Assembly: GCA_002269645.1 (NCBI GenBank)
Contig: NIVC01002528.1
Span: 1 to 64,000, forward strand
DNA: 64,000 nt
Direction of reading: 5' to 3'
DNA from: Macrostomum lignano
Taxonomy: Eukaryota
Positions 6,758 through 61,040 of the stretch are shown piece after piece. Every line of letters begins with the position of its first letter. Position 1 is the first letter of the stretch. The notes below the pieces were generated by a model, which worked only from the letters and a program-made list of their open reading frames with translations, had not been told where the DNA came from and did no database searches. Position numbers and translations under genes: made by a program.

Positions 6758-19085
<12,328 letters not shown>

Positions 19086-20138
19086 CTCTATTGAGCTTTC
19101 AGTGCTCTAGAAGAGGCACAACTTCCGGCGCGTTTTTCTGCTTGCTTGGGCAACTGCTAAATGAGGTCTATCGGGCTTACATTGGGTCTCTCTATTCTTT
19201 GATGGCGATGATGGCTATCTTAAGCTAAGGACTGACTCACTGACGCACTGACACACTATCGGTGCTGTCAAAACTGGCCTTGACAACCACAATTTAACTA
19301 TCAATTTTTATGCAGCGAGTATAGCCAGCCTTCTGCTGCTCTCAGTGTCTTTAATAGTGTGTATGGTTGAGCAGTTTTTTTGGCACTGGTCATGCATTAA
19401 GGCTTGGCTCAATTTTGATTGGCTAGTAACAGATAACCTCCAATCATGAGGTGCGCAGATCTGCCAATTTCAGCATAGGATTTTATTCATCCATCTAGAT
19501 GCTTCAGTGGCTTTGCATGCAGTCGGATTGGGAATTTCTCAACAGAAGTTTCGCGTGGAGATATTGGGCATGCGGCAATGGCGTGACTCTAATCTAGAAA
19601 GCTGGTTGATTGTTTGTCGTTTAAATCTACATTATTCAGGAAGGGTTCATATTGGACGTTTAAAATCAGTTGTCTTTAATCGTAATATTCCATGCGCATG
19701 CAGTTTACCCTCGCGGAACTAATCTTTCACCAGCAAACGAACTAAGGAACTTTGACCGATTGGTCGGGCATATACCCTCTAGAATGTGAGACGAAGGAAG
19801 AAAAGGGGTCGCCGATAGAGAGGGAGTTAGCCGGAGAGAGACAGTCCCTAGGGGGTCTGTTCGGTCTGTCTGCATTCCCTGCTGCAGCACAGCTACTGGC
19901 AGCTGGGTCCAATGCACTGCGGCTTCGCACACGCACACACAACCCTTTTCTCACCAAGAGATGAACTCTCAATCTTCTCCCCTCTCCGCCCCTCTCTCTC
20001 TCTTTAGCGCATCAGGAAATCCCATTATCCTCATTACAACCCGTGAGAGATGGAGCGCCTTGCCCGACGACCAGACGAGTAGGACGGAGACTATAACAAG
20101 AACGCTGTCCATGCTTTACTACTTCTTCTCGCTCTTTC

Positions 20139-21802
20139 TGTTTTAGGCAAACGGTGTACTTTTTGTCAATGTAGTAAAAAGAAACAAATGTTATGTTCTA
20201 CGGCACAGATTACCGACAAACATAGCTTAGCCATGCAGTTTCACTTGTCTTTTGGCACTCTTAATCCCCTCTATTTAGCTGTCGGCTAATCCAACAAGAC
20301 TTAAGAAGATTCAGCTGTCTGGACTAGTCTTACTAAAGGGTTTAAAGAGCTCTTAAATTATGGCTATATCCTCTGCGTGAACTCCCTATATAGGGACTGG
20401 GGAAACACCGGACTGACTGGCGACGACAAAGAGAAAGAGTAAAAAGGTCTATTGAATGAATGAATGCACAGGGCTCTCTGCTACGAAACTGATATACGCT
20501 TAGTCGATGGCTCCGCAGTGTAGAGACTCACCCAGTTGGCATGCATTATGCAAACACCAAAAACAGGAAACTGCTATACTTAGGCTAAGGCTAGCTAAAG
20601 ACAAGGCGGTGATTGAGATGGCTTAGTCTTTTCTCTCTCCCATCTCCCCATCTCAAATAAAAGGATTTGTCCAAACATGCGCAGCTTCAAAGTTCTACCG
20701 AACTGAAATCCCATCTATAGTCCGGAGTCTCTATTGCTTTTTGTCTGTTTGCTCCGGTCATGTTTTATGACTTTTTCACTATCGATGACAACAACGTCTT
20801 ATTCTCCAGGCAACTCAGAGAGATCTGGACGATTCAGACCTAAAGTGGATCATGAGAATTCATTTTCACCACTCAATATCGACTGATGAATAAAGATATC
20901 CAAGTTAATGGCTCTAAAAAATTCAACGAAATCAACACATTATAAAATACGCAACAAGGTCTTACTTTTGTGATGATGTGGCTCAAGGGCTCGGTCCTTT
21001 CGTGCCCCTTTCCCAGACCCGGGTTCGTGTACTGACCCTGGCTACGGTCCTCCACTGACACGCGTACGACGCGGTGTCCGTCGGGACTAGGCTGCTCGAG
21101 CGTACGACGCACGACAGCCTACAGACTCGCGTACGACGCAGAGCTGCTTGGGGTGGGACCGGCGTACGACGCACTTAATCCCTCTAAGGTGCCTAGTACA
21201 GATGCAGACCCAAATGACGTGCAAATTGGAAGGCTTACCAGCCGCGATTTCAGTCGTACAAGAAACAGCGCCGTCAGAGCAGTGGTGATCTCGATATCCT
21301 TTACTTATATATTTGTCTAGCAATTCTGCGAGGAATAGCAATTCAGCAACCAACGCTGGCACAATCGCCGAGGAGCCAAGAAGACGACGAGAATGGGGTC
21401 TCAAGGGGGGCCGAATAAATAGGCAGCAAACTGGGGGTCGAGGGCGCGGGATAAAGGCAGAAAAGGGGGCTTAGACATCAGCCAAGGCAACGCATGAGCT
21501 GTACCAGCCAATCGCCGGGGCGCAGCACGGCAGACTGGGACTGGCAGCCAATCACAAACAGGGGCGGGGCAGCAAAGCTAACAAAATAATGGGGCGGGGT
21601 CGCACAGGGGGGGTCGCACGCAGAGCATGGGGGGGTTGACTCAACAGAAAAGGTCTAGGCAGGGAGGGGAGGGGTACGCACGCGCAGAAGTGCAGGTGGG
21701 TGAGTCAGAAAATATCTAAGGAGGGGGGAGGAGGAGAGGACGGCCCACTGGCCCGGTGCAGCAACTTAGCAAAGAGCACACTGTCATAACGCATTCATGA
21801 CA
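20139..21802 (-). mobile_element. Candidate solo LTR (1664 bp)
   Basis: Termini TGT...ACA flanked by CTTTC at 20134-20138 and 21803-21807; CCAAT boxes (21508, 21548), GGGGCGGGG boxes (21561, 21591), TATTTATT on minus at 21414-21421. No gag/pol; the TSD match could be chance; orientation inferred. Confidence 0.4.
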
Positions 21803-21879
21803 CTTTCAAAGTTATTCATCTATCTCTCTGGAAATTACAAACCTGACCGGAGTTGAACTATTCATATATTTCAAATAGG

Positions 21880-23719
21880 TCAAGCCTGCCAAATAAATTT
21901 TCGCCTCCGTCTCAACCGAGTCGCCTCTCTGCCGCGCAATATCCGTCGCTTAGCGGGATCCAGTTCGCCAGCTTTCCTCGCCTGCTCCTGACTCGCACTC
22001 GCACTGCCGCCTGCGGCGCGTCGCTGCTCTTCCGCTTGTTTCCTCAACGCCGCCAGGTGCCTGGCCCGATGCACTCGCAGCTCGGCAATCACGGCGGCTG
22101 ACTGCAACCGACCGAACTGCAGTCCCTGACGCATCGGACCGGCTAAACAGCAGAACCAAATAATCAGAGCCAACGGAAGAATGACTCCAATCACTGCACT
22201 GTCGAATAGACCGCGCCAAACGTTTAGAAACCGGCTGGGCACATCGTTGAGACTGTCGCGACAGTTGCTAGACCGGGAGTCGCTGCCGTGGCAGACGTCG
22301 CCCTCTAGCCACGGCGGTGGGCACAGGCACTTGCGCTGGCTGGTCTGGAAGCCCTCCATCAGGCCGTCGGAGCTGACCTTACAGGTAGATCGCTGCCAAT
22401 CTGACCAGGAGCACCAGGCGCCGTGCAGGCCTTCCACTCTGCGAAAGAAGCCGTCCAATAGTTGACAGTTGGAGTCGCAACGACCATTGGGCTGGAGGTG
22501 CCGGTGAAGGATTAATGCACTTATCAGTCCTCATTGTCCGGCATTAGTATGTGCACACTCTCAGCCTTAGGGGTTGTGCCTTCATGGGCTAAAATTTAGC
22601 ACGACGAAAACGACACCGAATATGCACTAAGCAGTTGTACGTTCTCAAAATTCAAAACTATAATTTCTTACACCCTAACACAGCAAGCTTATGAAGCTTA
22701 ATTTTTGTCACTCGCTCAATGTGACCGCCTCTAAGGGGATAAATTGAGCCTATTTAACATAGGCAAAGCCAACTCTGCGCAATGAATGCCACGACACACA
22801 CGTAAATTTTATACTTGCTTGCTTGCAAATCGTAAAGAAAACCTTTATAATTACCAAAATCTGCAGTTCTCGTTAAACGAGATCAAACTCATTGTGGACT
22901 AAGCTGAAGGACTAATCATAGAAGAGAGATTAGTAAACTGAAACCAACGGATGAGGCAGCTAAGCCCTTGCTGCAGTGAGGCTGGATGAAATGGGGTTCG
23001 GTGCTAACAGGCGAGGAGGCAGTTTTTCTAAAATATTGCCCACATCAGTTCAACATGGGAATTTATTCCTGTCATATTTCATTAGAGTACTTTAGTCCAT
23101 ACTGGCTGTCTATGCGACAAATGAATATCAGGGGGTTTTAGCCTAGTGGTTAGAGCGACGGACTCACGACTTGAAGGTCGGGGGTTCGATTCCTGATTTC
23201 ACTGGAACAATTTGTGTCCTGAGCAAGACACTTAACTCTTCATGCATTGCTTCAGTTCACCCAGCTGTAAAATGGGTGCCAGCATTAGCTGGTGTGTGTG
23301 GCGACCCCCCTCCAGTCCTTGGACTGAACAGCCGTACACAGCCTTCCGACCGCTGAGCTGTCGGTTGTACATCTGCTCGTGGCAGGTGTAATAAACTGTT
23401 ATTATTATTAGAATACCCCACAAAACTTGTCAGTTTTTTCTTGCAGCGTACCAAAACTGCAAGTCCTCGTTGAGTAGTCGGTGGAGTTTAAATTGTGCGG
23501 AATGTTGGCAAACTTCAGGCAGACGCAGCGACGCCTGAGATCGGCCCGACAGGCGCCCGTGTTGGAGAGCCGCTGACAAGCAGACTCAGTCCAGATGCTC
23601 CAGTGGCAGATGTAATCTGGGTCGGATAGCTCGTCTTCGAATTCCATCAGCTCGACATCGATTGACTTTGTCAAAGTTACAATCAAGGTCAAAAGGAGCG
23701 ATACGGTTGTGCGTAACAT
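21880..23719 (-). CDS. Type I membrane protein with signal peptide, two TSP1-like repeats, TM helix and basic tail (~304 aa)
   Basis: Exon 23719-23417 (MLRTTVSLLLTLIVTLTKS; CHWSIWTESAC..RRRCVC) + exon 22491-21880 in phase 0 (HGAWCSWSDWQRSTC..GFQTSQRKCLCPPPWLEGDVCHG; TM AVIGVILPLALIIWFCCLAG). WxxWxxW..C..R..C pattern is the thrombospondin type-1 signature. Confidence 0.8.
23131..23410 (+). mobile_element. tRNA-headed SINE, family A, with CORE-like central domain and (TTA)n tail
   Basis: A box TAGCCTAGTGGTTAG, B box GGTTCGATTCC, then GTGTCCTGAGCAAGACACTTAAC..CAGTTCACCCAGCTGTAAAATGGG resembling the CORE domain; second copy inverted at 60019-60270. Confidence 0.85.
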
Positions 23720-25184
23720 TTTCAGCTACTCTTGTTATTTCTATAAGCTTCTGATGACGCTATCACGTGTTTAATTTTATGCACTTTAAACTAAATTTAA
23801 GTCATAGACAAATCTGAAGCAGGCGGTATTGTAGAAAATCAGCCTTTAGGATACTGAATGGTTATTCGTGTTGTCTATGGTTAACCCTACAATAATGGTT
23901 AACTATTTTTGGAACAAAATAGCAAACGCCAACGATAAAGAATAAGCGCTATGAAAAATTATTGGCGTTCATCGGACATCGGTCGACCATCAGACACGTT
24001 CACTGCTACATGCATCATAACTGAAATACCAATAACTGCGAAAGTGCTAGCAACGCCCAACGCTATTTAGGTTTTCGGAGCAAATCATGTTGTGACCTGC
24101 ACCTCACAATGCCCTTGACCCGACCCCTGCGCTGTCCGCCTGCCATTCTTCATTTTATTTTTCTCGTTTTCATTTTCATTGGCTGGCGTCTTTTCCTCTC
24201 TCTCTCTATCGTCTGGGCCCAGTCCAATCGTGTCTCTTGCCATGGAGGCACCTGATTGGCTAGCCTTTCCCCTTCCTTCTCTCTCGCCCTTCAACTCTGT
24301 GAGTTTTGTTCCCCCCCCCCCCCAACCCCCGCCCTGCGTGGCTTAGCCCCAACCAGCCCCGGTAAGACAGAAACTGCATACCAAATCCAAGTCTAGACTA
24401 GCTTTTCAAGACCGGACTACCCTAGACAGAGCTTTCTGCATACGGTCCAATGTCAGACCGGTCTACTATAGACAGAAGTAGGGTAGCTAGACCATAGACC
24501 ATAGACTGAACTACCCAGTCCGGACTAGCTAGTCTGGATTAAGCTTTCTGCATACGGCCCGATATTTCGGGTTTATTTTGATGGCGAGCCGACGGCGACG
24601 CTGGTCTCTGGTCATTTTTCCAAACCGCCTAAATAGCTCGTATATGCCGAATGCAAAAATGTTTTAAAATATACCGATTATGCACTTTTTTACTTTGCAA
24701 CTTCATAGTTAGTTTAATAAAATCTCTACCAGTAACATTTCCTATACCGCCTGCCAAAATTTCATTTTCATCTCTCTCTTTCAGATTTCAACGAGCCACT
24801 TTACTCGATCCTGTGAACATTTCCGATCGCTCTTTGTTTCCTTCACTGCACCTGGTGAAATGTGAAAACGCAGAGAACCGCGGCCACCTGAAGACTCTTC
24901 AGTTCGTTTTCTTTCCAGTTCCAGATCCTACATCTCCTACTCCGATATTACAGTACAGTTGAATCATGAATTGAAACTTTATCGGTTTCTGCATGCTGCT
25001 AAAATAAGATCCATGAACTTAAGCCTGAGATTAGCTGAGCTTGATAGAAATATATTTGACTTCTTAATCGCTTTATAAGCTCCTTATTTTCCCATGCTTA
25101 TTTCCTCTATGTTCCTGGCTATTTCATATATATACTCGTAATTAGATTTTTTCTTGACTTCTTACTACCTGTTTATAATCACAC

Positions 25185-27600
25185 CCTGCTTCCCCTACAT
25201 ATGTGTCCGCATCTACCTGCTTCCCTACATCTGTCTCTGCATCTCCCTGCTTCCCTACATCTGTCTCTGCATCTCCCTGCTTCCCTACATCTGCCTCTGC
25301 ATCCCCCTGCTCTCCATCCTCTGTCTCTGCATCTCCCTGCTTCCCTACATCTGTCTCTGTATCTCCCTGCTTCCCTACATCTGTCTCTGCATCTCCCTGC
25401 TTCCCTACATCTGTCTCTGCATCTCCCTGCTTCCCTACATCTGTCTCTGCATCTCCCTGCTTCCCTACATCTGTCTCTGTATCTCCCTGCTTCCCTACAT
25501 CTGTCTGTGCATCTCCCTGCTTCCCTACATCTGTCTCTGCATCTCCCTGCTTCCCTACATCTGTCTCTGCATCTCCCTGCTTCCCTACATCTGCCTCTGC
25601 ATCCCCCTGCTCTCCATCCTCTGTCTCTGCATCTCCCTGCTTCCCTACATCTGCCTCTGCATCCCCTGCTCTCCATCCTCTGTCTCTGCATCTCCCTGCT
25701 TCCCTACATCTGTCTCTGCATCTCCCTGCTTCCCTACATCTGCCTCTGCATCCCCCTGCTCTCCATCCTCTGTCTCTGCATCTCCCTGCTTCCCTACATC
25801 TGTCTCTGTATCTCCCTGCTTCCCTACATCTGTCTCTGCATCTCCCTGCTTCCCTACATCTGTCTCTGCATCTCCCTGCTTCCCTACATCTGTCTCTGCA
25901 TCTCCCTGCTTCCCTACATCTGTCTCTGTATCTCCCTGCTTCCCTAAATCTGTCTCTGCATCTCCGTGCTTCCCTACATCTGTCTCTGCATCTCCCTGCT
26001 TCCCTACATCTGTCTCTGCATCTCCCTGCTTCCCTACATCTGCCTCTGCATCCCCCTGCTCTCCATCCTCTGTCTCTGCATCTCCCTGCTTCCCTACATC
26101 TGTCTCTGCATCTCCCTGCTTCCCTACATCTGCCTCTGCATCCCCCTGCTCTCCATCCTCTGTCTCTGCATCTCCCTGCTTCCCTACATCTGTCTCTGTA
26201 TCTCCCTGCTTCCCTACATCTGTCTCTGCATCTCCCTGCTTCCCTACATCTGTCTCTGCATCTCCCTGCTTCCCTACATCTGTCTCTGCATCTCCCTGCT
26301 TCCCTACATCTGTCTCTGCATCTCCCTGCTTCCCTACATCTGCCTCTGCATCCCCCTGCTCTCCATCCTCTGTCTCTGCATCTCCCTGCTTCCCTACATC
26401 TGCCTCTGCATCCCCCTGCTCTCCATCCTCTGTCTCTGCATCTCCCTGCTTCCCTACATCTGTCTCTGCATCTCCCTGCTTCCCTACATCTGCCTCTGCA
26501 TCCCCCTGCTCTCCATCCTCTGTCTCTGCATCTCCCTGCTTCCCTACATCTGTCTCTGTATCTCCCTGCTTCCCTACATCTGTCTCTGCATCTCCCTGCT
26601 TCCCTACATCTGTCTCTGCATCTCCCTGCTTCCCTACATCTGTCTCTGCATCTCCCTGCTTCCCTACATCTGTCTCTGTATCTCCCTGCTTCCCTACATC
26701 TGTCTCTGCATCTCCGTGCTTCCCTACATCTGTCTCTGCATCTCCCTGCTTCCCTACATCTGTCTCTGCATCTCCCTGCTTCCCTACATCTGTCTCTGCA
26801 TCCCCCTGCTCTCCATCCTCTGTCTCTGCATCTCCCTGCTTCCCTACATCTGCCTCTGCATCCCCCTGCTCTCCATCCTCTGTCTCTGCATCTCCCTGCT
26901 TCCCTACATCTGTCTCTGCATCTCCCTGCTTCCCTACATCTGTCTCTGCATCTCCGTGCTTCCCTACATCTGTCTCTGCATCTCCCTGCTTCCCTACATC
27001 TGTCTCTGCATCTCCCTGCTTCCCTACATCTGTCTCTGCATCCCCTGCTCTCCATACATCTGTCTCTGCATCTCCCTGCTTCCCTACATCTGTCTCTGCA
27101 TCTCCCTGCTTCCCTACATCTGTCTCTGCATCTCCCTGCTTCCCTACATCTGTCTGTGCATCTCCCTGCTTCCCTACATCTGCCTCTGCATCTCCCTGCT
27201 TCCCTACATCTGTCTCTGCATCCCCCTGCTCTCCATCCTCTGTCTCTGCATCTCCCTGCTTCCCTACATCTGCCTCTGCATCCCCCTGCTCTCCATCCTC
27301 TGTCTCTGCATCTCCCTGCTTCCCTACATCTGCCTCTGCATCTCCCTGCTTCCCTACATCTGTCTCTGCATCCCCCTGCTCTCCATCCTCTGTCTCTGCA
27401 TCTCCCTGCTTCCCTACATCTGCCTCTGCATCCCCCTGCTCTCCATCCTCTGTCTCTGCATCTCCCTGCTTCCCTACATCTGCCTCTGCATCCCCCTGCT
27501 CTCCATCCTCTGTCTCTGCATCTCCCTGCTTCCCTACATCTGCCTCTGCATCCCCCTGCTTCCCTACATCTGTCTCTGCATCCCCCTGCTCTCCATCCTC
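25185..27600. repeat. 30-bp minisatellite (CATCTGTCTCTGCATCTCCCTGCTTCCCTA)n, ~80 copies, two unit types
   Basis: Direct read; variant unit with GCC..CCCCCTGCTCTCCATCC interspersed. Confidence 0.98.
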
Positions 27601-40400: not shown

Positions 40401-43400
40401 TCAGTTCACTGTCTCTTCAGTTCACTGTCTCTTCAGTCTCTTTAGTTCACTGTCTCTTCAGTTCACTGTCTCTTCAGTTCACTGTCTCTTCAGTTCACTG
40501 TCTCTTCACTGTCTCTTCAGTTCACTGTCTCTTCACTGTCTCTTCAGTTCACTGTCTCTTCAGTTCACTGTCTCTTCACTGTCTCTTCAGTTCACTGTCT
40601 CTTCAGTTCACTGTCTCTTCACTGTCTCTTCAGTTCACTGTCTCTTCACTGTCTCTTCAGTTCACTGTCTCTTCACTGTCTCTTCAGTTCACTGTCTCTT
40701 CAGTTCACTGTCTCTTCAGTTCACTGTCTCTTCAGTTCACTGTCTCTTCAGTTCACTGTCTCTTCACTGTCTCTTCAGTTCACTGTCTCTTCAGTTCACT
40801 GTCTCTTCACTGTCTCTTCAGTTCACTGTCTCTTCACTGTCTCTTCAGTTCACTGTCTCTTCACTGTCTCTTCAGTTCACTGTCTCTTCAGTTCACTGTC
40901 TCTTCAGTTCACTGTCTCTTCAGTTCACTGTCTCTTCAGTTCACTGTCTCTTCAGTTCACTGTCTCTTCAGTTCACTGTCTCTTCACTGTCTCTTCAGTT
41001 CACTGTCTCTTTAGTTCACTGTCTCTTCAGTTCACTGTCTCTTCAGTTCACTGTCTCTTCAGTTCACTGTCTCTTCAGTTCACTGTCTCTTCAGTTCACT
41101 GTCTCTTCACTGTCTCTTCAGTTCACTGTCTCTTCAGTTCACTGTCTCTTCAGTTCACTGTCTCTTCAGTTCACTGTCTCTTCAGTTCACTGTCTCTTCA
41201 GTTCACTGTCTCTTCACTGTCTCTTCAGTTCACTGTCTCTTCAGTTCACTGTCTCTTCAGTTCACTGTCTCTTCAGTTCACTGTCTCTTCAGTTCACTGT
41301 CTCTTCAGTTCACTGTCTCTTCAGTTCACTGTCTCTTCAGTTCACTGTCTCTTCAGTTCACTGTCTCTTCAGTTCACTGTCTCTTCAGTTCACTGTCTCT
41401 TCAGTTCACTGTCTCTTCAGTTCACTGTCTCTTCAGTTCACTGTCTCTTCAGTTCACTGTCTCTTCAGTTCACTGTCTCTTCAGTTCACTGTCTCTTCAG
41501 TTCACTGTCTCTTCAGTTCACTGTCTCTTCACTGTCTCTTCAGTTCACTGTCTCTTCACTGTCTCTTCAGTTCACTGTCTCTTCAGTTCACTGTCTCTTC
41601 AGTTCACTGTCTCTTCAGTTCACTGTCTCTTCAGTTCACTGTCTCTTCAGTTCACTGTCTCTTCACTGTCTCTTCAGTTCACTGTCTCTTCACTGTCTCT
41701 TCAGTTCACTGTCTCTTTAGTTCACTGTCTCTTCAGTTCACTGTCTCTTCAGTTCACTTTCTCTTCAGTTCACTGTCTCTTCAGTTCACTGTCTCTTTAG
41801 TTCACTGTCTCTTCACTGTCTCTTCAGTTCACTGTCTCTTTAGTTCACTGTCTCTTCAGTTCACTGTCTCTTCAGTTCACTGTCTCTTCAGTTCACTGTC
41901 TCTTCAGTTCACTGTCTCTTCAGTTCACTGTCTCTTCACTGTCTCTTCAGTTCACTGTCTCTTTAGTTCACTGTCTCTTCAGTTCACTGTCTCTTCAGTT
42001 CACTGTCTCTTCAGTTCACTGTCTCTTCAGTTCACTGTCTCTTCACTGTCTCTTCAGTTCACTGTCTCTTCAGTTCACTGTCTCTTCAGTTCACTGTCTC
42101 TTCAGTTCACTGTCTCTTCAGTTCACTGTCTCTTCACTGTCTCTTCAGTTCACTGTCTCTTCAGTTCACTGTCTCTTTAGTTCACTGTCTCTTCAGTTCA
42201 CTGTCTCTTCACTGTCTCTTCAGTTCACTGTCTCTTCAGTTCACTGTCTCTTCAGTTCACTGTCTCTTCAGTTCACTGTCTCTTCAGTTCACTGTCTCTT
42301 CACTGTCTCTTCAGTTCACTGTCTCTTCACTGTCTCTTCAGTTCACTGTCTCTTCACTGTCTCTTCAGTTCACTGTCTCTTCACTGTCTCTTCAGTTCAC
42401 TGTCTCTTCAGTTCACTGTCTCTTCAGTTCACTGTCTCTTCAGTTCACTGTCTCTTCAGTTCACTGTCTCTTCAGTTCACTGTCTCTTCAGTTCACTGTC
42501 TCTTCAGTTCACTGTCTCTTCAGTTCACTGTCTCTTCACTGTCTCTTCAGTTCACTGTCTCTTCACTGTCTCTTCAGTTCACTGTCTCTTCAGTTCACTG
42601 TCTCTTCACTGTCTCTTCAGTTCACTGTCTCTTCAGTTCACTGTCTCTTCACTGTCTCTTCAGTTCACTGTCTCTTCACTGTCTCTTCAGTTCACTGTCT
42701 CTTCACTGTCTCTTCAGTTCACTGTCTCTTCAGTTCACTGTCTCTTCAGTTCACTGTCTCTTCAGTTCACTGTCTCTTCAGTTCACTGTCTCTTCAGTTC
42801 ACTGTCTCTTCAGTTCACTGTCTCTTCAGTTCACTGTCTCTTCAGTTCACTGTCTCTTCAGTTCACTGTCTCTTCAGTTCACTGTCTCTTCAGTTCACTG
42901 TCTCTTCACTGTCTCTTCAGTTCACTGTCTCTTCACTGTCTCTTCAGTTCACTGTCTCTTCAGTTCACTGTCTCTTCAGTTCACTGTCTCTTCACTGTCT
43001 CTTCAGTTCACTGTCTCTTCAGTTCACTGTCTCTTCACTGTCTTTTCAGTTCACTGTCTCTTCACTGTCTCTTCAGTTCACTGTCTCTTCACTGTCTCTT
43101 CACTGTCTCTTCAGTTCACTGTCTCTTCAGTTCACTGTCTCTTCACTGTCTCTTCAGTTCACTGTCTCTTCACTGTCTCTTCAGTTCACTGTCTCTTCAG
43201 TTCATTGTCTCTTCAGTTCACTGTCTCTTCAGTTCACTGTCTTTACTGTCTCTTCAGTTCACTGTCTCTTCAGTTCACTGTCTCTTCAGTTCACTGTCTC
43301 TTCAGTACACTGTCTCTTCAGTTCACTGTCTCTTCACTGTCTCTTCAGTTCACTGTCTCTTCAGTTCACTGTCTCTTCACTGTCTCTTCAGTTCACTGTC

Positions 43401-46400
43401 TCTTCACTGTCTCTTCAGTTCACTGTCTCTTCACTGTCTCTTCAGTTCACTGTCTCTTCAGTTCACTGTCTCTTCAGTTCACTGTCTCTTCAGTTCACTG
43501 TCTCTTCAGTTCACTGTCTCTTCAGTTCACTGTCTCTTCAGTTCACTGTCTCTTCACTGTCTCTTCAGTTCACTGTCTCTTTAGTTCACTGTCTCTTCAG
43601 TTCACTGTCTCTTCAGTTCACTGTCTCTTCAGTTCACTGTCTCTTCAGTTCACTGTCTCTTCAGTTCACTGTCTCTTCACTTTCTCTTCAGTTCACTGTC
43701 TCTTTAGTTCACTGTCTCTTCAGTTCACTGTCTCTTCAGTTCACTGTCTCTTCAGTTCACTGTCTCTTCAGTTCACTGTCTCTTCACTGTCTCTTCAGTT
43801 CACTGTCTCTTCAGTTCACTGTCTCTTCAGTTCACTGTCTCTTCAGTTCACTGTCTCTTCAGTTCACTGTCTCTTCAGTTCACTGTCTCTTCAGTTCACT
43901 GTCTCTTCAGTTCACTGTCTCTTCAGTTCACTGTCTCTTCAGTTCACTGTCTCTTCAGTTCACTGTCTCTTCAGTTCACTGTCTCTTCAGTTCACTGTCT
44001 CTTCAGTTCACTGTCTCTTCAGTTCACTGTCTCTTCAGTTCACTGTCTCTTCAGTTCACTGTCTCTTCAGTTCACTGTCTCTTCAGTTCACTGTCTCTTC
44101 ACTGTCTCTTCAGTTCACTGTCTCTTCAGTTCACTGTCTCTTTAGTTCACTGTCTCTTCAGTTCACTGTCTCTTCAGTTCACTGTCTCTTCAGTTCACTG
44201 TCTCTTCAGTTCACTGTCTCTTCACTGTCTCTTCAGTTCACTGTCTCTTTAGTTCACTGTCTCTTCAGTTCACTGTCTCTTCAGTTCACTGTCTCTTCAG
44301 TTCACTGTCTCTTCAGTTCACTGTCTCTTCAGTTCACTGTCTCTTCAGTTCACTGTCTCTTCAGTTCACTGTCTCTTCAGTTCACTGTCTCTTCAGTTCA
44401 CTGTCTCTTCAGTTCACTGTCTCTTCAGTTCACTGTCTCTTCAGTTCACTGTCTCTTCACTGTCTCTTCAGTTCACTGTCTCTTCAGTTCACTGTCTCTT
44501 CAGTTCACTGTCTCTTCAGTTCACTGTCTCTTCTGTCTCTTCACTGTCTCTTCAGTTCACTGTCTCTTCAGTTCACTGTCTCTTCAGTTCACTGTCTCTT
44601 CAGTTCACTGTCTCTTCACTGTCTCTTCAGTTCACTGTCTCTTCAGTTCACTGTCTCTTCAGTTCACTGTCTCTTCAGTTCACTGTCTCTCAGTTCACTG
44701 TCTCTTCAGTTCACTGTCTCTTCAGTTCACTGTCTCTTCAGTTCACTGTCTCTTCAGTTCACTGTCTCTTAGTTCACTGTCTCTTCAGTTCACTGTCTCT
44801 TCAGTTCACTGTCTCTTCAGTTCACTGTCTCTTCAGTTCACTGTCTCTTCAGTTCACTGTCTCTTCAGTTCACTGTCTCTTCAGTTCACTGTCTCTTCAC
44901 TGTCTCTTCAGTTCACTGTCTCTTCAGTTCACTGTCTCTTCAGTTCACTGTCTCTTCAGTTCACTGTCTCTTCAGTTCACTGTCTCTTCAGTTCACTGTC
45001 TCTTCAGTTCACTGTCTCTTCAGTTCACTGTCTCTTCAGTTCACTGTCTCTTCAGTTCACTGTCTCTTCAGTTCACTGTCTCTTCAGTTCACTGTCTCTT
45101 CAGTTCACTGTCTCTTCACTGTCTCTTCAGTTCACTGTCTCTTCAGTTCACTGTCTCTTCAGTTCACTGTCTCTTCAGTTCACTGTCTCTTCACTGTCTC
45201 TTCAGTTCACTGTCTCTTCAGTTCACTGTCTCTTCAGTTCACTGTCTCTTCAGTTCACTGTCTCTTCAGTTCACTGTCTCTTCAGTTCACTGTCTCTTCA
45301 GTTCACTGTCTCTTCAGTTCACTGTCTCTTCACTGTCTCTTCAGTTCACTGTCTCTTCAGTTCACTGTCTCTTCAGTTCACTGTCTCTTCAGTTCACTGT
45401 CTCTTCAGTTCACTGTCTCTTCAGTTCACTGTCTCTTCAGTTCACTGTCTCTTCAGTTCACTGTCTCTTCAGTTCACTGTCTCTTCACTGTCTCTTCAGT
45501 TCACTGTCTCTTCAGTTCACTGTCTCTTCAGTTCACTGTCTCTTCAGTTCACTGTCTCTTCAGTTCACTGTCTCTTCAGTTCACTGTCTCTTCAGTTCAC
45601 TGTCTCTTCAGTTCACTGTCTCTTCAGTTCACTGTCTCTTCACTGTCTCTTCAGTTCACTGTCTCTTCAGTTCACTGTCTCTTCAGTTCACTGTCTCTTC
45701 AGTTCACTGTCTCTTCAGTTCACTGTCTCTTCAGTTCACTGTCTCTTCAGTTCACTGTCTCTTCAGTTCACTGTCTCTTCAGTTCACTGTCTCTTCAGTT
45801 CACTGTCTCTTCAGTTCACTGTCTCTTCAGTTCACTGTCTCTCAGTTCACTGTCTCTTCAGTTCACTGTCTCTTCAGTTCACTGTCTCTTCAGTTCACTG
45901 TCTCTTCAGTTCACTGTCTCTTCAGTTCACTGTCTCTTCAGTTCACTGTCTCTTCAGTTCACTGTCTCTTCACTGTCTCTTCAGTTCACTGTCTCTTCAG
46001 TTCACTGTCTCTTCAGTTCACTGTCTCTTCAGTTCACTGTCTCTTCAGTTCACTGTCTCTTCAGTTCACTGTCTCTTCAGTTCACTGTCTCTTCAGTTCA
46101 CTGTCTCTTCAGTTCACTGTCTCTTCAGTTCACTGTCTCTTCAGTTCACTGTCTCTTCAGTTCACTGTCTCTTCAGTTCACTGTCTCTTCACTGTCTCTT
46201 CAGTTCACTGTCTCTTCAGTTCACTGTCTCTTCAGTTCACTGTCTCTTCAGTTCACTGTCTCTTCACTGTCTCTTCAGTTCACTGTCTCTTCAGTTCACT
46301 GTCTCTTCAGTTCACTGTCTCTTCAGTTCACTGTCTCTTCAGTTCACTGTCTCTTCAGTTCACTGTCTCTTCAGTTCACTGTCTCTTCAGTTCACTGTCT

Positions 46401-49400
46401 CTTCACTGTCTCTTCAGTTCACTGTCTCTTCAGTTCACTGTCTCTTCAGTTCACTGTCTCTTCAGTTCACTGTCTCTTCAGTTCACTGTCTCTTCACTGT
46501 CTCTTCAGTTCACTGTCTCTTCAGTTCACTGTCTCTTCAGTTCACTGTCTCTTCAGTTCACTGTCTCTTCACTGTCTCTTCAGTTCACTGTCTCTTCAGT
46601 TCACTGTCTCTTCAGTTCACTGTCTCTTCAGTTCACTGTCTCTTCAGTTCACTGTCTCTTCAGTTCACTGTCTCTTCAGTTCACTGTCTCTTCAGTTCAC
46701 TGTCTCTTCAGTTCACTGTCTCTTCACTGTCTCTTCAGTTCACTGTCTCTTCAGTTCACTGTCTCTTCAGTTCACTGTCTCTTCAGTTCACTGTCTCTTC
46801 AGTTCACTGTCTCTTCAGTTCACTGTCTCTTCAGTTCACTGTCTCTTCAGTTCACTGTCTCTTCAGTTCACTGTCTCTTCAGTTCACTGTCTCTTCAGTT
46901 CACTGTCTCTTCAGTTCACTGTCTCTTCAGTTCACTGTCTCTTCAGTTCACTGTCTCTTCAGTTCACTGTCTCTTCAGTTCACTGTCTCTTCAGTTCACT
47001 GTCTCTTCAGTTCACTGTCTCTTCAGTTCACTGTCTCTTCAGTTCACTGTCTCTTCACTGTCTCTTCAGTTCACTGTCTCTTCACTGTCTCTTCAGTTCA
47101 CTGTCTCTTCAGTTCACTGTCTCTTCAGTTCACTGTCTCTTCAGTTCACTGTCTCTTCAGTTCACTGTCTCTTCAGTTCACTGTCTCTTCACTGTCTCTT
47201 CAGTTCACTGTCTCTTCAGTTCACTGTCTCTTCAGTTCACTGTCTCTTCAGTTCACTGTCTCTTCAGTTCACTGTCTCTTCAGTTCACTGTCTCTTCAGT
47301 TCACTGTCTCTTCACTGTCTCTTCAGTTCACTGTCTCTTCAGTTCACTGTCTCTTCAGTTCACTGTCTCTTCAGTTCACTGTCTCTTCAGTTCACTGTCT
47401 CTTCACTGTCTCTTCAGTTCACTGTCTCTTCAGTTCACTGTCTCTTCAGTTCACTGTCTCTTCAGTTCACTGTCTCTTCAGTTCACTGTCTCTTCAGTTC
47501 ACTGTCTCTTCAGTTCACTGTCTCTTCAGTTCACTGTCTCTTCAGTTCACTGTCTCTTCAGTTCACTGTCTCTTCAGTTCACTGTCTCTTCAGTTCACTG
47601 TCTCTTCAGTTCACTGTCTCTTCACTGTCTCTTCAGTTCACTGTCTCTTCAGTTCACTGTCTCTTCAGTTCACTGTCTCTTCAGTTCACTGTCTCTTCAG
47701 TTCACTGTCTCTTCAGTTCACTGTCTCTTCAGTTCACTGTCTCTTCACTGTCTCTTCAGTTCTCTGTCTCTTCAGTTCACTGTCTCTTTAGTTCACTGTC
47801 TCTTCAGTTCACTGTCTCTTCACTGTCTCTTCAGTTCACTGTCTCTTCAGTTCACTGTCTCTTCAGTTCACTGTCTCTTCAGTTCACTGTCTCTTCAGTT
47901 CACTGTCTCTTCAGTTCACTGTCTCTTCAGTTCACTGTCTCTTCAGTTCACTGTCTCTTCAGTTCACTGTCTCTTCAGTTCACTGTCTCTTCAGTTCACT
48001 GTCTCTTCACTGTCTCTTCAGTTCACTGTCTCTTCAGTTCACTGTCTCTTAGTTCACTGTCTCTTCAGTTCACTGTCTCTTCACTGTCTCTTCAGTTCAC
48101 TGTCTCTTCAGTTCACTGTCTCTTCAGTTCACTGTCTCTTCAGTTCACTGTCTCTTCAGTTCACTGTCTCTTCAGTTCACTGTCTCTTCAGTTCACTGTC
48201 TCTTCACTGTCTCTTCAGTTCACTGTCTCTTCAGTTCACTGTCTCTTTAGTTCACTGTCTCTTCAGTTCACTGTCTCTTCAGTTCACTGTCTCTTCACTG
48301 TCTCTTCAGTTCTCTGTCTCTTCAGTTCACTGTCTCTTTAGTTCACTGTCTCTTCAGTTCACTGTCTCTTCACTGTCTCTTCAGTTCACTGTCTCTTCAG
48401 TTCACTGTCTCTTCAGTTCACTGTCTCTTCAGTTCACTGTCTCTTCAGTTCACTGTCTCTTCAGTTCACTGTCTCTTCAGTTCACTGTCTCTTCACTGTC
48501 TCTTCAGTTCACTGTCTCTTCACTGTCTCTTCAGTTCACTGTCTCTTCAGTTCACTGTCTCTTCAGTTCACTGTCTCTTCAGTTCACTGTCTCTTCAGTT
48601 CACTGTCTCTTCACACTGTCTCTTCAGTTCACTGTCTCTTCAGTTCACTGTCTCTTCAGTTCACTGTCTCTTCAGTTCACTGTCTCTTCAGTTCACTGTC
48701 TCTTCAGTTCACTGTCTCTTCAGTTCACTGTCTCTTCAGTTCACTGTCTCTTCAGTTCACTGTCTCTTCAGTTCACTGTCTCTTCAGTTCACTGTCTCTT
48801 CAGTTCACTGTCTCTTCAGTTCACTGTCTCTTCACACTGTCTCTTCAGTTCACTGTCTCTTCAGTTCACTGTCTCTTCACTGTCTCTTCAGTTCACTGTC
48901 TCTTCAGTTCACTGTCTCTTCAGTTCACTGTCTCTTCAGTTCACTGTCTCTTCAGTTCACTGTCTCTTCAGTTCACTGTCTCTTCAGTTCACTGTCTCTT
49001 CAGTTCACTGTCTCTTCAGTTCACTGTCTCTTCAGTTCACTGTCTCTTCAGTTCACTGTCTCTTCAGTTCACTGTCTCTTCAGTTCACTGTCTCTTCAGT
49101 TCACTGTCTCTTCAGTTCACTGTCTCTTCAGTTCACTGTCTCTTCAGTTCACTGTCTCTTCAGTTCACTGTCTCTTCAGTTCACTGTCTCTTCAGTTCAC
49201 TGTCTCTTCAGTTCACTGTCTCTTCAGTTCACTGTCTCTTCAGTTCACTGTCTCTTCAGTTCACTGTCTCTTCAGTTCACTGTCTCTTCAGTTCACTGTC
49301 TCTTCAGTTCACTGTCTCTTCAGTTCACTGTCTCTTCAGTTCACTGTCTCTTCAGTTCACTGTCTCTTCAGTTCACTGTCTCTTCAGTTCACTGTCTCTT

Positions 49401-58779: not shown

Positions 58780-60790
58780 ATGCCACAAAAGGTAAAAGGC
58801 TTCAATAAGAAGGTGCAAGAGGTTGCACCAACTGACCAAGAAAGTGAAGCTTGGATAACAGCTATAATTAATGGCTTGGCTTTGGCTGAACAGCATAATG
58901 AGTACCATGAAGGCTTTATGCATTGGATTAATGAATTGAATAAGTGAGTTTTTCAATGACATCAGTGTTTAATAATAAATTTTTGTCTTGGGATTTGTGT
59001 TCTAACATAAAAATCCTATTTTTTGGGCTTTATGAAGCTACCTACAGATGTTTGAGCTGCACTTCTCAAAGGAGACGCATTTGCAGCTAATTCAACTGAT
59101 GTACCAGCATATGACCAACCTGGAGCACGACAGTCTTATTCAGCTAGGCTGTATGGATGCGCTTTACCGACTGCTTAAGTGAGCTGCTTCCTTTGATAGA
59201 ATTTTGTTCATGGGTTTGGTATTTATTGGAATAGTTCTCTAATTCATTTCCTCATGTTTTCAATCATTTGGTTGGTTCTTTTGAATTGTATTGCAATAGA
59301 TAGGGGGTCATAGCCCAGTCAGTGGTCTGGCGCTGCGCTCTGATGTGTGTGCGGCCCAGGCTCGATTCCAAGTGCAGTCACATAAATTTGGGGCTAAATT
59401 GAAATCTCGGCTTGGCTCTGCTCGTGCAATTAACGCCAAGCTTGAGGGCCAACCCCCAAGGCACAGTGAAGTGTACTGTGTACAGGCCTAACGATAAATA
59501 AAGTTTAGGGCCGCTGTACACTCCTGTGTGAGTGTGGACCTGTGCGTGTGACTACGCGCTTGTGTGCCTGCTCAGGGGAGTCGGCGGAATGGGCAGTAAT
59601 GCCTCTCGCCGGTTGTGTGACTGTCGCTTGTAAAGTGCGCCTGGGTGCACACGCCGCCCCCTGTCTCTTGTCTAACAAGAAAGTAACAGGTTACAAGGTA
59701 TTTTAGATTGTTTTCGAGCTCTACCTAAATGATTTAGATGGCCCTTAAACTCATTTGCTATTCGATTATAATTTTACGCAACAGTTTACCGGTCATCTAA
59801 ATCTACTTCTATCAACACATGCTAAATCTCTTATTATTTACTCACTTTCAGGCACACAAAGTGTCTGCAGCCCAGCGACCTTCGCTTGGACTGGCGCCCG
59901 CTCTACAATCTGGCTAGGCACTATAAAAATTTCCAATCGTCAATTATTCGACACGGAAACGATTTTATTAGAATGTGAGTTGTTTAAGTTGTGTACATGG
60001 GAGTTCGAGTTGACTTGATTACACCTGCCCCAATGGCCAGATGTGCAACCGACAGCTCAGCCGCAGCTATTGCTGCATACGGCTGTTCAGTTCAAGGACT
60101 GGGGGGTCGCCACACACACCCTCAGTTCCCCAGCTAATGCTGGCACCCATTTTACAGCTGTGTGAACTGAAGCAATGCAGAGTCAGTGTCTTGCTCAAGG
60201 ACACAAATTGTTCCGAGTGGGTCGAGAATCGAACCCCCGACCTTTGCAGTCGTGATTTCGATGCTCTAAAGCACTCATACACACGCTCACACAGGGTGTA
60301 CAGCGGCCCTGACTCTCTTATCGTCAGGCATGTACAGCCTCTGTGCCTTGGGGTTGGCCCTCAAGGCTGTGAATCGCTCAATTATTAGCTTATAAATTCA
60401 TTCGCCTATCTTCATCCATTTGCCAAGCTCTTGGCGCCAGTTCCAGCGCTGTGCCGCCCGCGCCTCGCCCTACTTCGAGCCCGACGCTACCAGGCAAATT
60501 CTGGACGAATTGTCGCCTCGACTCTGCAAGACTTCGGTAGATTTCGAAACTCAGTCTCACTACCTGGCTCTGCTGCCTGTCTGCTTCTTGCCCGGCGTGT
60601 CGCAGGCGGATACTATCGATCTGTGGGCCAAGCCCATTCTCAAGTTCTGGTGCGCGCCCTGCCGCTCTTTGGGGCTGGGGGTCAGGCACTGCGCCTATCT
60701 CTGTCTGTGTGTGTTGTCTGTCTGTGTGTCTTAGTGTCTGTCTGTCTGTCTGTCTGTCTGCCTGTCTGTCTGTCTGTCTGTCAATCTGGC

Positions 60791-60866
<76 letters not shown>

Positions 60867-60920
60867 AGTCAATCTGTCTGTCTGTCTGTCAATCTGTCTG
60901 TCTGTCTGTCTGTCTGTCAA

Positions 60921-60953
<33 letters not shown>

Positions 60954-60976
60954 TTGTCTGTCTGTCTGTCTTATAG

Positions 60977-61040
<64 letters not shown>

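What the first reader, a model, noticed from the sequence alone, without database searches (positions are those of the whole stretch)
21052..21185. Array of four stem-loops with an identical GCGTACGACGC apex but different, self-compensating stems
The exact 11-mer occurs at 21062, 21100, 21129 and 21162, separated by unique 27-, 18- and 22-nt spacers. It is itself a mini-hairpin (GCGT-ACG-ACGC) containing the palindrome CGTACG. The unique flanks extend each stem: GACAC/GTGTC; TAGGCTG-C-TCG/CGA-CAGCCTA; CAG-A-CTC/GAG-CTG; weaker GGGA/TCCC. Different sequence with the same structure implies selection on RNA or ssDNA folding, not tandem duplication. Inference: a multivalent protein-binding or kissing-loop dimerisation/packaging signal of a retroelement leader, or an undescribed structured ncRNA. 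More hairpins lie just upstream (20977-21041). Best candidate for a novel element in this window.
Basis: partly seen in the sequence, partly recalled or inferred. Interest (0 to 1): 0.7.

Follow-up and report, generated by a model that had tools for sequence, protein, structure and literature searches.

The report
Hairpin motif array inside flatworm LTR
The four identical 11-base motifs are real and sit in an 834-base retrotransposon LTR that has inserted beside a gene of the flatworm Macrostomum lignano, so they are most likely a control signal of that mobile element and not a new host RNA gene.

Summary
GCGTACGACGC occurs exactly four times, at 21062, 21100, 21129 and 21162, against 0.09 expected. 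Taken together, the unrelated flanks pair across each copy better than composition-matched shuffles (z about -3.5 to -3.8). Hairpin 2 is strong, hairpins 1 and 3 are moderate, and hairpin 4 and the "extra hairpins" upstream are no better than chance.

The context changes the reading. The window is Macrostomum lignano DNA. Two co-linear copies of this locus in the public assembly lack window 20969-21802. That 834-bp insert has TG...CA ends, a 7-of-8 terminal inverted repeat and a 4-bp target-site duplication (CTTT), so it is a young, polymorphic solo LTR. It lies 77 nt past the stop codon of an EGF-like gene. The array occupies positions 84-217 of the LTR.

LTR orientation could not be settled, so the array is either in U3 or in R-U5. 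My best reading (about 0.4) is that it is a multivalent protein-binding RNA hairpin module of the retroelement. The main rival (about 0.3) is a cluster of transcription-factor sites in U3. No other copy of this LTR could be retrieved, so covariation is untested. There is no Rfam match and no mention of the motif in the literature. Interest is modest.

The parts
20965..20968 (.). Target-site duplication, left copy (CTTT)
   Evidence: The empty sites in L007 and L008 carry a single CTTT. The window has it on both sides of the insert.
20969..21802 (.). 834-bp insertion read as a solo LTR. It has TG...CA ends and a terminal inverted repeat, TGTGATGA / TCATGACA, matching at 7 of 8. Orientation is unresolved.
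   Evidence: It is absent from two co-linear M. lignano loci that are 98-99% identical on one flank and 92-93% on the other. The junctions were read base by base. There is no second copy and no internal direct repeat in the window, L007 or L008.
21803..21806 (.). Target-site duplication, right copy (CTTT)
21057..21078 (.). Hairpin 1: GACAC / core 21062-21072 / bulged G / GTGTC. It has 9 bp and can be extended to 21050-21085.
   Evidence: Significance is p 0.007-0.13 depending on the null.
21088..21121 (.). Hairpin 2: TAGGCTG-C-TCG-A / core 21100-21110 / A-CGA-CAGCCTA. It has 14 bp and is the only hairpin that is significant on its own.
   Evidence: (p 0.001-0.004)
21122..21146 (.). Hairpin 3: CAG-A-CTC / core 21129-21139 / A-GAG-CTG. 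It has 10 bp and directly abuts hairpin 2.
   Evidence: (p 0.05-0.3). One two-sided A:T to T:A change relative to hairpin 1 was read from the flanks listed.
21150..21182 (.). Motif copy 4 (core 21162-21172), with only a weak distal GGGA/TCCC pairing
   Evidence: p 0.15-0.58, not significant
21304..21311 (-). TATA-box consensus TATATAAG on the - strand. The same palindromic TATATA also reads as a weaker TATA on the + strand. AGTAAA overlaps at 21300-21305 (-).
21414..21419 (+). The only canonical AATAAA in the LTR. It is on the + strand, about 105 nt from the TATATA.
21505..21710 (.). Duplicated-module region with two CCAAT boxes (21508, 21548), two GGGGCGGGG (21561, 21591) and two TGASTCA sites (21637, 21701). 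This half of the LTR is 65% purine on the + strand.
   Evidence: sequence read
21880..23719 (-). Host gene flanking the insertion: an EGF-like-domain protein, homologue of BOX15_Mlig011016g1. Exons are 23719-23417 and 22494-21883, with the stop codon at 21882-21880. The LTR begins 77 nt downstream of the stop.
18237..19085 (-). First coding exon of the downstream host gene (peptidase M13 / neprilysin-like), 1.9 kb from the LTR
   Evidence: (PF05649 and PF01431 on the L007 gene)

Best explanation
The array is a cis-acting module carried by the long terminal repeat of an LTR retrotransposon of Macrostomum lignano. Here the LTR survives as a young solo LTR (window 20969-21802) inserted just past the stop codon of an EGF-like gene.

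Shown:
- The insertion, its TG...CA ends and its 4-bp target-site duplication.
- Four identical 11-mers.
- Arms that are unrelated in sequence but pair across the motif in at least two or three of the four units.
- An unpaired base between the invariant apex and the variable lower stem in hairpins 1-3.

Inferred: when the LTR is transcribed as part of the element's RNA, each unit folds into a stem-loop. Its lower stem serves only to present an invariant apex, made of a 4-bp GCGU/ACGC helix and a 3-nt loop. A sequence-specific RNA-binding protein, either the element's own Gag/nucleocapsid or a host factor, binds several copies side by side.

The role depends on orientation. If the LTR reads on the - strand, the array lies in R-U5, about 90-225 nt after the TATA-directed start, in the 5' end of the genomic RNA. 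The role would then be RNA selection or dimer formation. If the LTR reads on the + strand, the array lies in U3, in the 3' untranslated end of the RNA. The role would then be export, stability or 3'-end handling.

My probabilities: LTR context about 0.9; selection on folding rather than on duplex DNA about 0.55; the specific 'multivalent RNA-protein platform' mechanism about 0.4.
For: Organism and context:
- The flanking ORF is 98% identical to M. lignano proteins.
- Two homologous loci align up to window 20968 and resume at about 21802 without the 834 bp.
- The junctions show CTTT|TG...CA|CTTT against a single CTTT at the empty site.
- M. lignano carries hundreds of LTR-retrotransposon families, mostly Ty3/mdg4, with solo LTRs near genes and short motifs repeated 1-4 times in their LTRs (PMC12801592).

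Motif: 4 exact copies against 0.09 expected. All 11 positions are identical while the flanks are unrelated. That argues for sequence-specific recognition of the core and against recent duplication.

Folding:
- The summed energy of core-centred stem-loops exceeds composition-matched shuffles at z -3.5 to -3.8 and p 0.0002-0.01 under three nulls.
- The - strand minimum-energy fold of the array is exactly four independent core-capped hairpins.
- Hairpins 1-3 share an unpaired base next to the apex.
- Hairpins 1 and 3, the only pair with residual flank similarity, differ by one two-sided A:T to T:A change that keeps a pair (flanks read).
Against: - There is no comparative evidence. No second copy of this LTR could be obtained, so true covariation is untested.
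- Only hairpin 2 is individually significant, and copy 4 has essentially no lower stem.
- The array as a whole does not fold better than dinucleotide shuffles (z -1.4 to -1.6).
- Both strands fold equally well and no G-U pairs mark a transcribed strand, so RNA, single-stranded DNA and cruciform readings are not separated.
- An invariant 11-mer repeated every 29-38 bp in an LTR is also what a transcription-factor site cluster looks like.
- No expression data are available.
- Orientation is unresolved. A canonical AATAAA 105 nt after the TATATA, purine-rich sense and antisense-to-host placement favour the + strand. A better TATA match, the upstream CCAAT / GC-box / AP-1-like pairs and the usual U3 > R-U5 proportions favour the - strand.
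Confidence: 0.4

Rival explanations
1. The four 11-mers are duplex-DNA binding sites for a transcription factor in the U3 enhancer of the LTR, which would read on the + strand. They would play the same role as the heat-shock elements that other M. lignano LTR families carry in 1-4 copies upstream of their start sites. The palindromic arms would be incidental, or would help cruciform extrusion.
For: - On the + strand the TATATA at about 21305 is followed about 105 nt later by the only AATAAA of the LTR. That places the motifs roughly 145-275 bp upstream of the start, the usual enhancer position.
- The core is itself an inverted repeat with a 3-nt spacer, typical of sites for dimeric factors.
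- There is strict 11/11 identity with free spacers of 18-27 nt.
- There is precedent in the same species (PMC12801592).
- The + orientation is antisense to the host gene, and the + strand is purine-rich.
Against: - A duplex-binding factor gives no reason for 5-10 extra base pairs of unrelated sequence to pair across each site (z -3.5 to -3.8).
- The motif matches no heat-shock element, and a full-text literature search found nothing on it.
- A second block of paired consensus promoter sites lies on the other side of the TATA. That suggests the other side is U3.
Confidence: 0.3
2. The array has no function of its own. It would be the decayed remnant of a local duplication, or of template switching during reverse transcription, inside one LTR copy. 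The arm pairing would be partly chance and partly inherited from an ancestral palindromic unit.
For: - Only one hairpin is individually significant and one copy has no stem.
- The array's overall fold is unexceptional.
- Units 1 and 3 keep traces of common descent.
- The right half of the LTR also shows local duplications.
Against: - Decay would erode the 11-mer as fast as the flanks, yet the core is 44/44 identical while the flanks are at random-level identity.
- The joint pairing statistic survives three different nulls.
Confidence: 0.12
3. The hairpins act as single-stranded DNA during reverse transcription, for example in strong-stop DNA at strand transfer, or as cruciforms in the integrated DNA. 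They would not act as RNA.
For: The hairpins are also stable with DNA parameters (-4 to -13 kcal/mol each; z -3.3 to -3.7). Both strands fold equally well with Watson-Crick pairs only. That is expected if both the RNA and its DNA complement, or the DNA alone, must fold.
Against: Four tandem sequence-invariant apices have no known role in strand transfer. It is hard to see why 11 nt would be invariant without a sequence-specific reader.
Confidence: 0.08
4. It is a host structured non-coding RNA gene, or a host 3'-UTR regulatory element of the EGF-like gene.
For: The array lies about 700-830 nt past the stop codon of a - strand gene. On that strand the loops are pyrimidine-purine-pyrimidine triloops, which recalls decay elements bound by Roquin-type proteins. 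That resemblance is from my own knowledge and is a lead only.
Against: Both other copies of the locus lack the whole 834 bp, so it cannot be a conserved host element. There is no Rfam match at gathering or permissive thresholds.
Confidence: 0.03

Closest known systems
Solo LTRs and LTR-borne motif repeats of M. lignano Ty3/mdg4 retrotransposons (Ustyantsev et al. 2025, PMC12801592)
   Same: Same species. It is an LTR with TG...CA ends. A short motif is repeated 1-4 times inside the LTR. That paper also reports solo LTRs lying within 2 kb of host genes.
   Different: The motif here is not a heat-shock element. Each copy is embedded in its own imperfect palindrome. The family and superfamily of this LTR are unknown, because no internal region is present.
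Duplicated trans-activation response (TAR) hairpins in the R region of some lentiviruses (own knowledge)
   Same: There are two or three adjacent stem-loops with the same apical loop and a bulge next to the upper stem. The lower stems differ. They lie inside the LTR-derived 5' end of the RNA and are bound by a protein in several copies.
   Different: There is no sequence similarity and no Rfam hit. The position at +1 of R is not shown here. The loop is 3 nt. A trans-activator is not known for this class of element.
Gammaretroviral packaging-signal double hairpin with identical tetraloops (own knowledge)
   Same: These are neighbouring hairpins with identical short loops on different stems. The loops end in a self-complementary CG that can make a two-base-pair loop-loop contact. 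They serve Gag binding and dimer formation. Here too the loop's CG is the only self-complementary part.
   Different: Those hairpins lie in the leader downstream of the primer-binding site, not in the LTR. Here the apical stem is also invariant. The function is untested.
Iron-responsive element array in the transferrin-receptor 3' UTR (own knowledge)
   Same: There are several hairpins with an invariant apex, an unpaired base separating the upper helix from a sequence-variable lower helix, and unique spacers. It is a multivalent binding site for one protein.
   Different: It has a different loop and bulge and is a conserved host gene element. This is an analogy of architecture only.
Su(Hw) binding-site array of the Drosophila gypsy element (own knowledge)
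   Same: It is a retroelement-borne cluster of one short DNA motif with unique spacers of a few tens of bp, acting as duplex DNA.
   Different: It has twelve sites in the 5' untranslated region, not the LTR. There are no palindromic arms around the sites.

Membership tests
LTR of an LTR retrotransposon (solo LTR) | 5'-TG...CA-3' termini with a short terminal inverted repeat | tested here: met
   TGTGATGA at 20969-20976 and TCATGACA at 21795-21802, complementary at 7 of 8 positions.
LTR of an LTR retrotransposon (solo LTR) | 4-6 bp target-site duplication, single at the empty site | tested here: met
   CTTT on both sides in the window and once in L007. L008 has a near-identical empty site. It could be read as 5 bp if the terminal A is counted with the duplication.
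LTR of an LTR retrotransposon (solo LTR) | Internal promoter and polyadenylation signals that define U3/R/U5 | tested here: inconclusive
   A TATA box (21304-21311) and AATAAA (21414, + strand) are present, but the signals disagree on orientation. No transcript data are available.
LTR of an LTR retrotransposon (solo LTR) | Belongs to a repeated family with full-length copies (paired LTRs, primer-binding site, polypurine tract, gag-pol) | not testable with these tools
   There is no second copy in the window, L007 or L008. ORFs within the LTR are not in the protein collection. The public DNA collections that can be searched here hold no flatworm genome.
Any Rfam family (structured RNAs, retroviral cis-elements included) | Covariance-model match at or near the gathering score | tested here: not met
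   There were 0 hits at gathering score over 64 kb. At E up to 10 over 20300-21900, nothing overlaps 21052-21185.
Retroelement dimerisation / packaging signal (kissing-loop type) | Palindrome of 4-6 nt exposed in a hairpin loop | tested here: not met
   The predicted loop is 3 nt. CGTACG is half inside the apical stem, and only CG is self-complementary in the loop.
Retroelement dimerisation / packaging signal (kissing-loop type) | Location in the 5' untranslated RNA (R-U5 or leader) | tested here: inconclusive
   This is true only if the LTR reads on the - strand, and orientation is unresolved. It is not in a post-LTR leader in either case.
U3 enhancer / transcription-factor site cluster | Repeated short motif upstream of the LTR's transcription start | tested here: inconclusive
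   This is true only if the LTR reads on the + strand.
U3 enhancer / transcription-factor site cluster | Motif matches a described binding site | tested here: not met
   There is no heat-shock element in the LTR. The 11-mer appears in one unrelated paper only.
Plain tandem repeat / minisatellite | Units similar over their whole length | tested here: not met
   Tandem Repeats Finder reports nothing at 21052-21185. Flank identity between units is at the random level apart from units 1 and 3. By contrast, every viral or metagenome contig with clustered copies of the 11-mer was a plain tandem repeat with constant flanks.

The most novel reading that the evidence does not exclude
This would be a previously undescribed retroelement cis-signal in which the LTR-derived end of the genomic RNA carries a row of stem-loops. 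Their invariant 11-nt apex (4-bp helix plus triloop, set off by an unpaired base) would be read several times over by the element's Gag or a host protein, while the lower stems drift by compensatory change. That would be a flatworm counterpart of multi-hairpin recognition signals known from retroviruses, and a tractable example of structure-only selection inside a transposable element family.
Probability: 0.3. Interest if true: 0.5.

Novelty: new variant of a known kind. Interest (0 to 1): 0.3.

Why it matters
If the arms prove to co-vary across copies, this would be one of the few defined RNA recognition signals in an invertebrate Ty3/mdg4-type element. M. lignano has transgenesis and abundant expression data, and LTR regulation is already under study there. 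It would also show how a mobile element delivers ready-made hairpin or binding-site arrays into host 3' UTRs and promoters, as this insertion does. If the arms do not co-vary, it is an ordinary cluster of factor-binding sites in an ordinary solo LTR. Either way, the main practical result is that the region is a polymorphic transposon insertion and not a host non-coding RNA gene.

Tried and rejected
1. Rfam, at gathering score over the whole window and permissively around the site, found nothing relevant. A tRNA scan found none, so a tRNA-derived SINE head is not supported.
2. A motif-cluster scan of viral contigs gave 6 loci and a scan of metagenome contigs gave 21 loci. All are unrelated microbial tandem repeats, mostly GC-rich, with constant flanks and no palindromic arms. 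They are chance sharing of an 11-mer, not homologues.
3. A protein search with the longest ORF inside the LTR, meant to fish out other copies, gave no hits. An exact look-up of the window's own 159-aa version of the flanking protein found nothing on record. The other cluster members have no contigs. No further M. lignano DNA could therefore be fetched.
4. A protein search with the peptidase M13 first exon gave no hit at the threshold. Its identity was taken instead from the Pfam marks on the L007 gene and from tblastn of P0003.
5. RNAalifold on the four units returned only the invariant 4-bp apex, because the lower stems are in different registers. It is therefore not a usable covariation test.
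6. My first constrained-fold script had the constraint symbols reversed and gave no extra pairs. The corrected run is.
7. The literature has no paper on the motif and none describing such an array in LTR retrotransposons. The supplement of PMC12801592 is not held.
8. I considered and rejected a DNA transposon or MITE (only an 8-bp terminal inverted repeat, with TG...CA ends and promoter and poly(A) signals inside), a Helitron or other rolling-circle end (a target-site duplication is present), and a miRNA or piRNA hairpin cluster (the stems are too short).
Full report
**1. The observation**

GCGTACGACGC occurs exactly four times on the + strand, at 21062, 21100, 21129 and 21162. It occurs nowhere else in the window even with one mismatch. 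Chance expectation is 0.09, and no shuffle out of 100 reached four. With two mismatches there are three more hits against 1.8 expected. The spacers are 27, 18 and 22 nt. Tandem Repeats Finder does not report the region. Anchored comparison of the 12-nt flanks gives 0-7 identities against a random mean of 3.1. Only units 1 and 3 show residual similarity, 7/12 on the left and 5/12 on the right. The "same core, unique flanks" description is therefore correct.

**2. Do the flanks pair?**

Free folding of 20960-21200 places hairpins 1-3 with the core at the apex on both strands. The minimum-energy fold of the - strand of 21052-21185 is four independent core-capped hairpins.

I then forced a single stem-loop centred on each core, with 14-nt flanks and left-with-right pairing only. 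The energies are -15.2, -18.9, -13.5 and -10.0 kcal/mol on the + strand and -17.4, -20.0, -12.5 and -10.7 on the - strand.

| Null model for the summed energy | + strand | - strand |
|---|---|---|
| Own-flank shuffles | p 0.0096 | p 0.0028 |
| Random genomic flanks | p 0.0006 | p 0.0002 |
| Pooled-flank shuffles, RNA parameters | z -3.5 | z -3.8 |
| Pooled-flank shuffles, DNA parameters | z -3.3 | z -3.7 |

Taken singly, only hairpin 2 (21088-21121, 14 bp) is clearly significant. Hairpins 1 and 3 are moderate and copy 4 has no convincing lower stem.

Two cautions apply. The array as a whole does not fold better than dinucleotide shuffles (z -1.6 and -1.4). The "further hairpins" at 20971-21055 are at chance level (z -0.4).

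In hairpins 1-3 an unpaired base lies directly next to the invariant apex. Units 1 and 3 differ by one two-sided change that keeps a pair (flanks).

**3. What the region is**

The ORF at 21880-22458 (-) is 98% identical to two Macrostomum lignano proteins, BOX15_Mlig011016g1 and BOX15_Mlig016119g1. I fetched their loci from assembly GCA_002269645.1 as L007 and L008. Neither contains the motif.

BLASTN shows that both loci are co-linear with the window. Identity is 97.8-98.8% over 16001-20968 and 92-93% over about 21802-24370. Both loci lack the stretch in between. Reading the junctions gives the following:
- Empty site: ...GGTCTTA CTTT CAAAG...
- Window: ...GGTCTTA CTTT [TGTGATGATG ... TTCATGACA] CTTT CAAAG...

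The insert is 20969-21802 (834 bp). It has TG...CA ends, a 7-of-8 terminal inverted repeat and a 4-bp target-site duplication. It has no internal long direct repeats and no second copy in the window, L007 or L008.

These are the hallmarks of a solo LTR. It is young, because it post-dates the divergence of locus copies that differ by 1-2% next to it. M. lignano is known to carry about 1,900 LTR-retrotransposon copies in about 400 families, mostly Ty3/mdg4. Solo LTRs occur near genes, and some families have short regulatory motifs repeated 1-4 times in the LTR (PMC12801592).

**4. Gene context**

The EGF-like gene has exons 23719-23417 and 22494-21883 on the - strand, with its stop codon at 21882-21880. 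The LTR begins 77 nt further on, probably in the 3' UTR. A peptidase M13 gene starts near 19085 on the same strand. The array occupies positions 84-217 from the left end of the LTR, or 618-751 counted from the right end.

**5. Orientation of the LTR**

Orientation decides whether the array is in U3 or in R-U5. The signals conflict.

For the + strand:
- It has the only AATAAA (21414), about 105 nt after the TATATA at about 21305.
- The right half is 65% purine on this strand.
- This orientation is antisense to the host gene.

For the - strand:
- The TATA reads as the full consensus TATATAAG (21311-21304).
- It would be preceded by pairs of CCAAT (21508, 21548), GGGGCGGGG (21561, 21591) and TGASTCA (21637, 21701) sites in duplicated modules.
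- It gives the usual proportions, with U3 about 530 nt and R-U5 about 305 nt.
- Against it, only a variant AGTAAA overlapping the TATA is available as a poly(A) signal.

I rate the two orientations as roughly equal. There is no heat-shock element.

**6. Mechanism**

Complete identity of all 11 positions beside random-level flanks argues for a sequence-specific reader of the core and against recent duplication. Pairing of unrelated arms across the core, with a shared discontinuity next to the apex, is what a presented-hairpin binding site looks like. A duplex-DNA site does not require it.

I therefore favour, at about 0.4, a multivalent RNA hairpin platform of the retroelement. It would be bound by Gag/nucleocapsid or by a host protein. 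In R-U5 it would serve RNA selection or dimer formation. In U3 it would serve export, stability or 3'-end handling.

The main rival, at about 0.3, is a cluster of transcription-factor sites in U3, for which this species offers a direct precedent. Smaller shares go to a non-functional remnant (0.12), a single-stranded-DNA or cruciform role (0.08) and a host element (0.03). The empty sites essentially exclude the host-element reading.

The loop is 3 nt and only its CG is self-complementary. The computed gain on dimerising (-7.3 kcal/mol per hairpin pair) arises from the core alone and is of the size expected for converting two hairpins into one duplex.

**7. Known families**

There is no Rfam match and no tRNA. 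The motif is absent from the searchable literature apart from one unrelated paper. No paper describing such an array in LTR retrotransposons was found. Clusters of the 11-mer in viral and metagenome contigs are all ordinary tandem repeats with constant flanks in unrelated microbial DNA.

The closest analogues in architecture, from my own knowledge, are:
- duplicated TAR hairpins;
- the gammaretroviral double hairpin with identical tetraloops;
- the transferrin-receptor iron-responsive element array;
- on the DNA side, the gypsy Su(Hw) site array and LTR enhancer repeats.

Membership in any of these families is either not met or untestable here.

**8. Limits**

I could not retrieve any other copy of this LTR. 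No expression or probing data were available. The statistics rest on four units chosen by eye.

**9. Verdict**

The retroelement attribution is right in substance, but the element is an LTR and not a leader. The host non-coding RNA reading is excluded, and the function is unproven. The region is a new variant of a known kind of LTR-borne repeated cis-element, of modest interest (0.3).

Noticed in passing
window 28409-54251: A single 25.8-kb array of a 16-bp satellite (unit CTTCAGTTCACTGTCT, about 1,700 copies, 88% matches) with extreme strand skew (GC skew about -0.45, AT skew about -0.57). It generates long spurious ORFs, for example 43205-47791.
   Followed up: no
window 25184-27590; 15335-16406; 10918-11784; 1-285; 60700-61040; 61684-62565; 63080-63505 and others: Mini- and microsatellites are unusually dense. 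They include a 30-bp unit x80, (GACA)n x268, a 16-bp unit x54, (TCTA)n, (TCTG)n, a 21-bp unit x40 and a 14-17-bp unit x27. More than half of the window is tandem repeat.
   Followed up: no
window 24371-24560 versus L007 8386-9306 and L008 7008-7904: A second structural polymorphism lies upstream of the EGF-like gene. The window's 190 bp are replaced in both reference loci by about 900 bp of AT-rich DNA with long internal inverted repeats. It looks like a foldback or MITE-type insertion. No tandem repeat is present there.
   Followed up: partly
window 21500-21760 (right half of the LTR): Duplicated modules carry paired consensus CCAAT, GC-box and AP-1-like sites. There are also many G-runs on the + strand (GGGGCGGGG, GGGGGGG, GGGAGGGGAGGGG) that could form G-quadruplexes.
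   Followed up: partly
window 18237-23719 (- strand) and protein P0003: An older UniProt gene model (A0A1I8IXN1, 583 aa) fuses the EGF-like gene with the first exons of the peptidase M13 gene, treating the intergenic stretch as an intron. The two genes may be co-transcribed, or the model may be wrong. The LTR insertion lies inside that stretch.
   Followed up: no
window 24417-24451 and 24529-24563: A 35-nt direct repeat (77% identity) 112 nt apart, inside the segment that differs from the reference loci.
   Followed up: no
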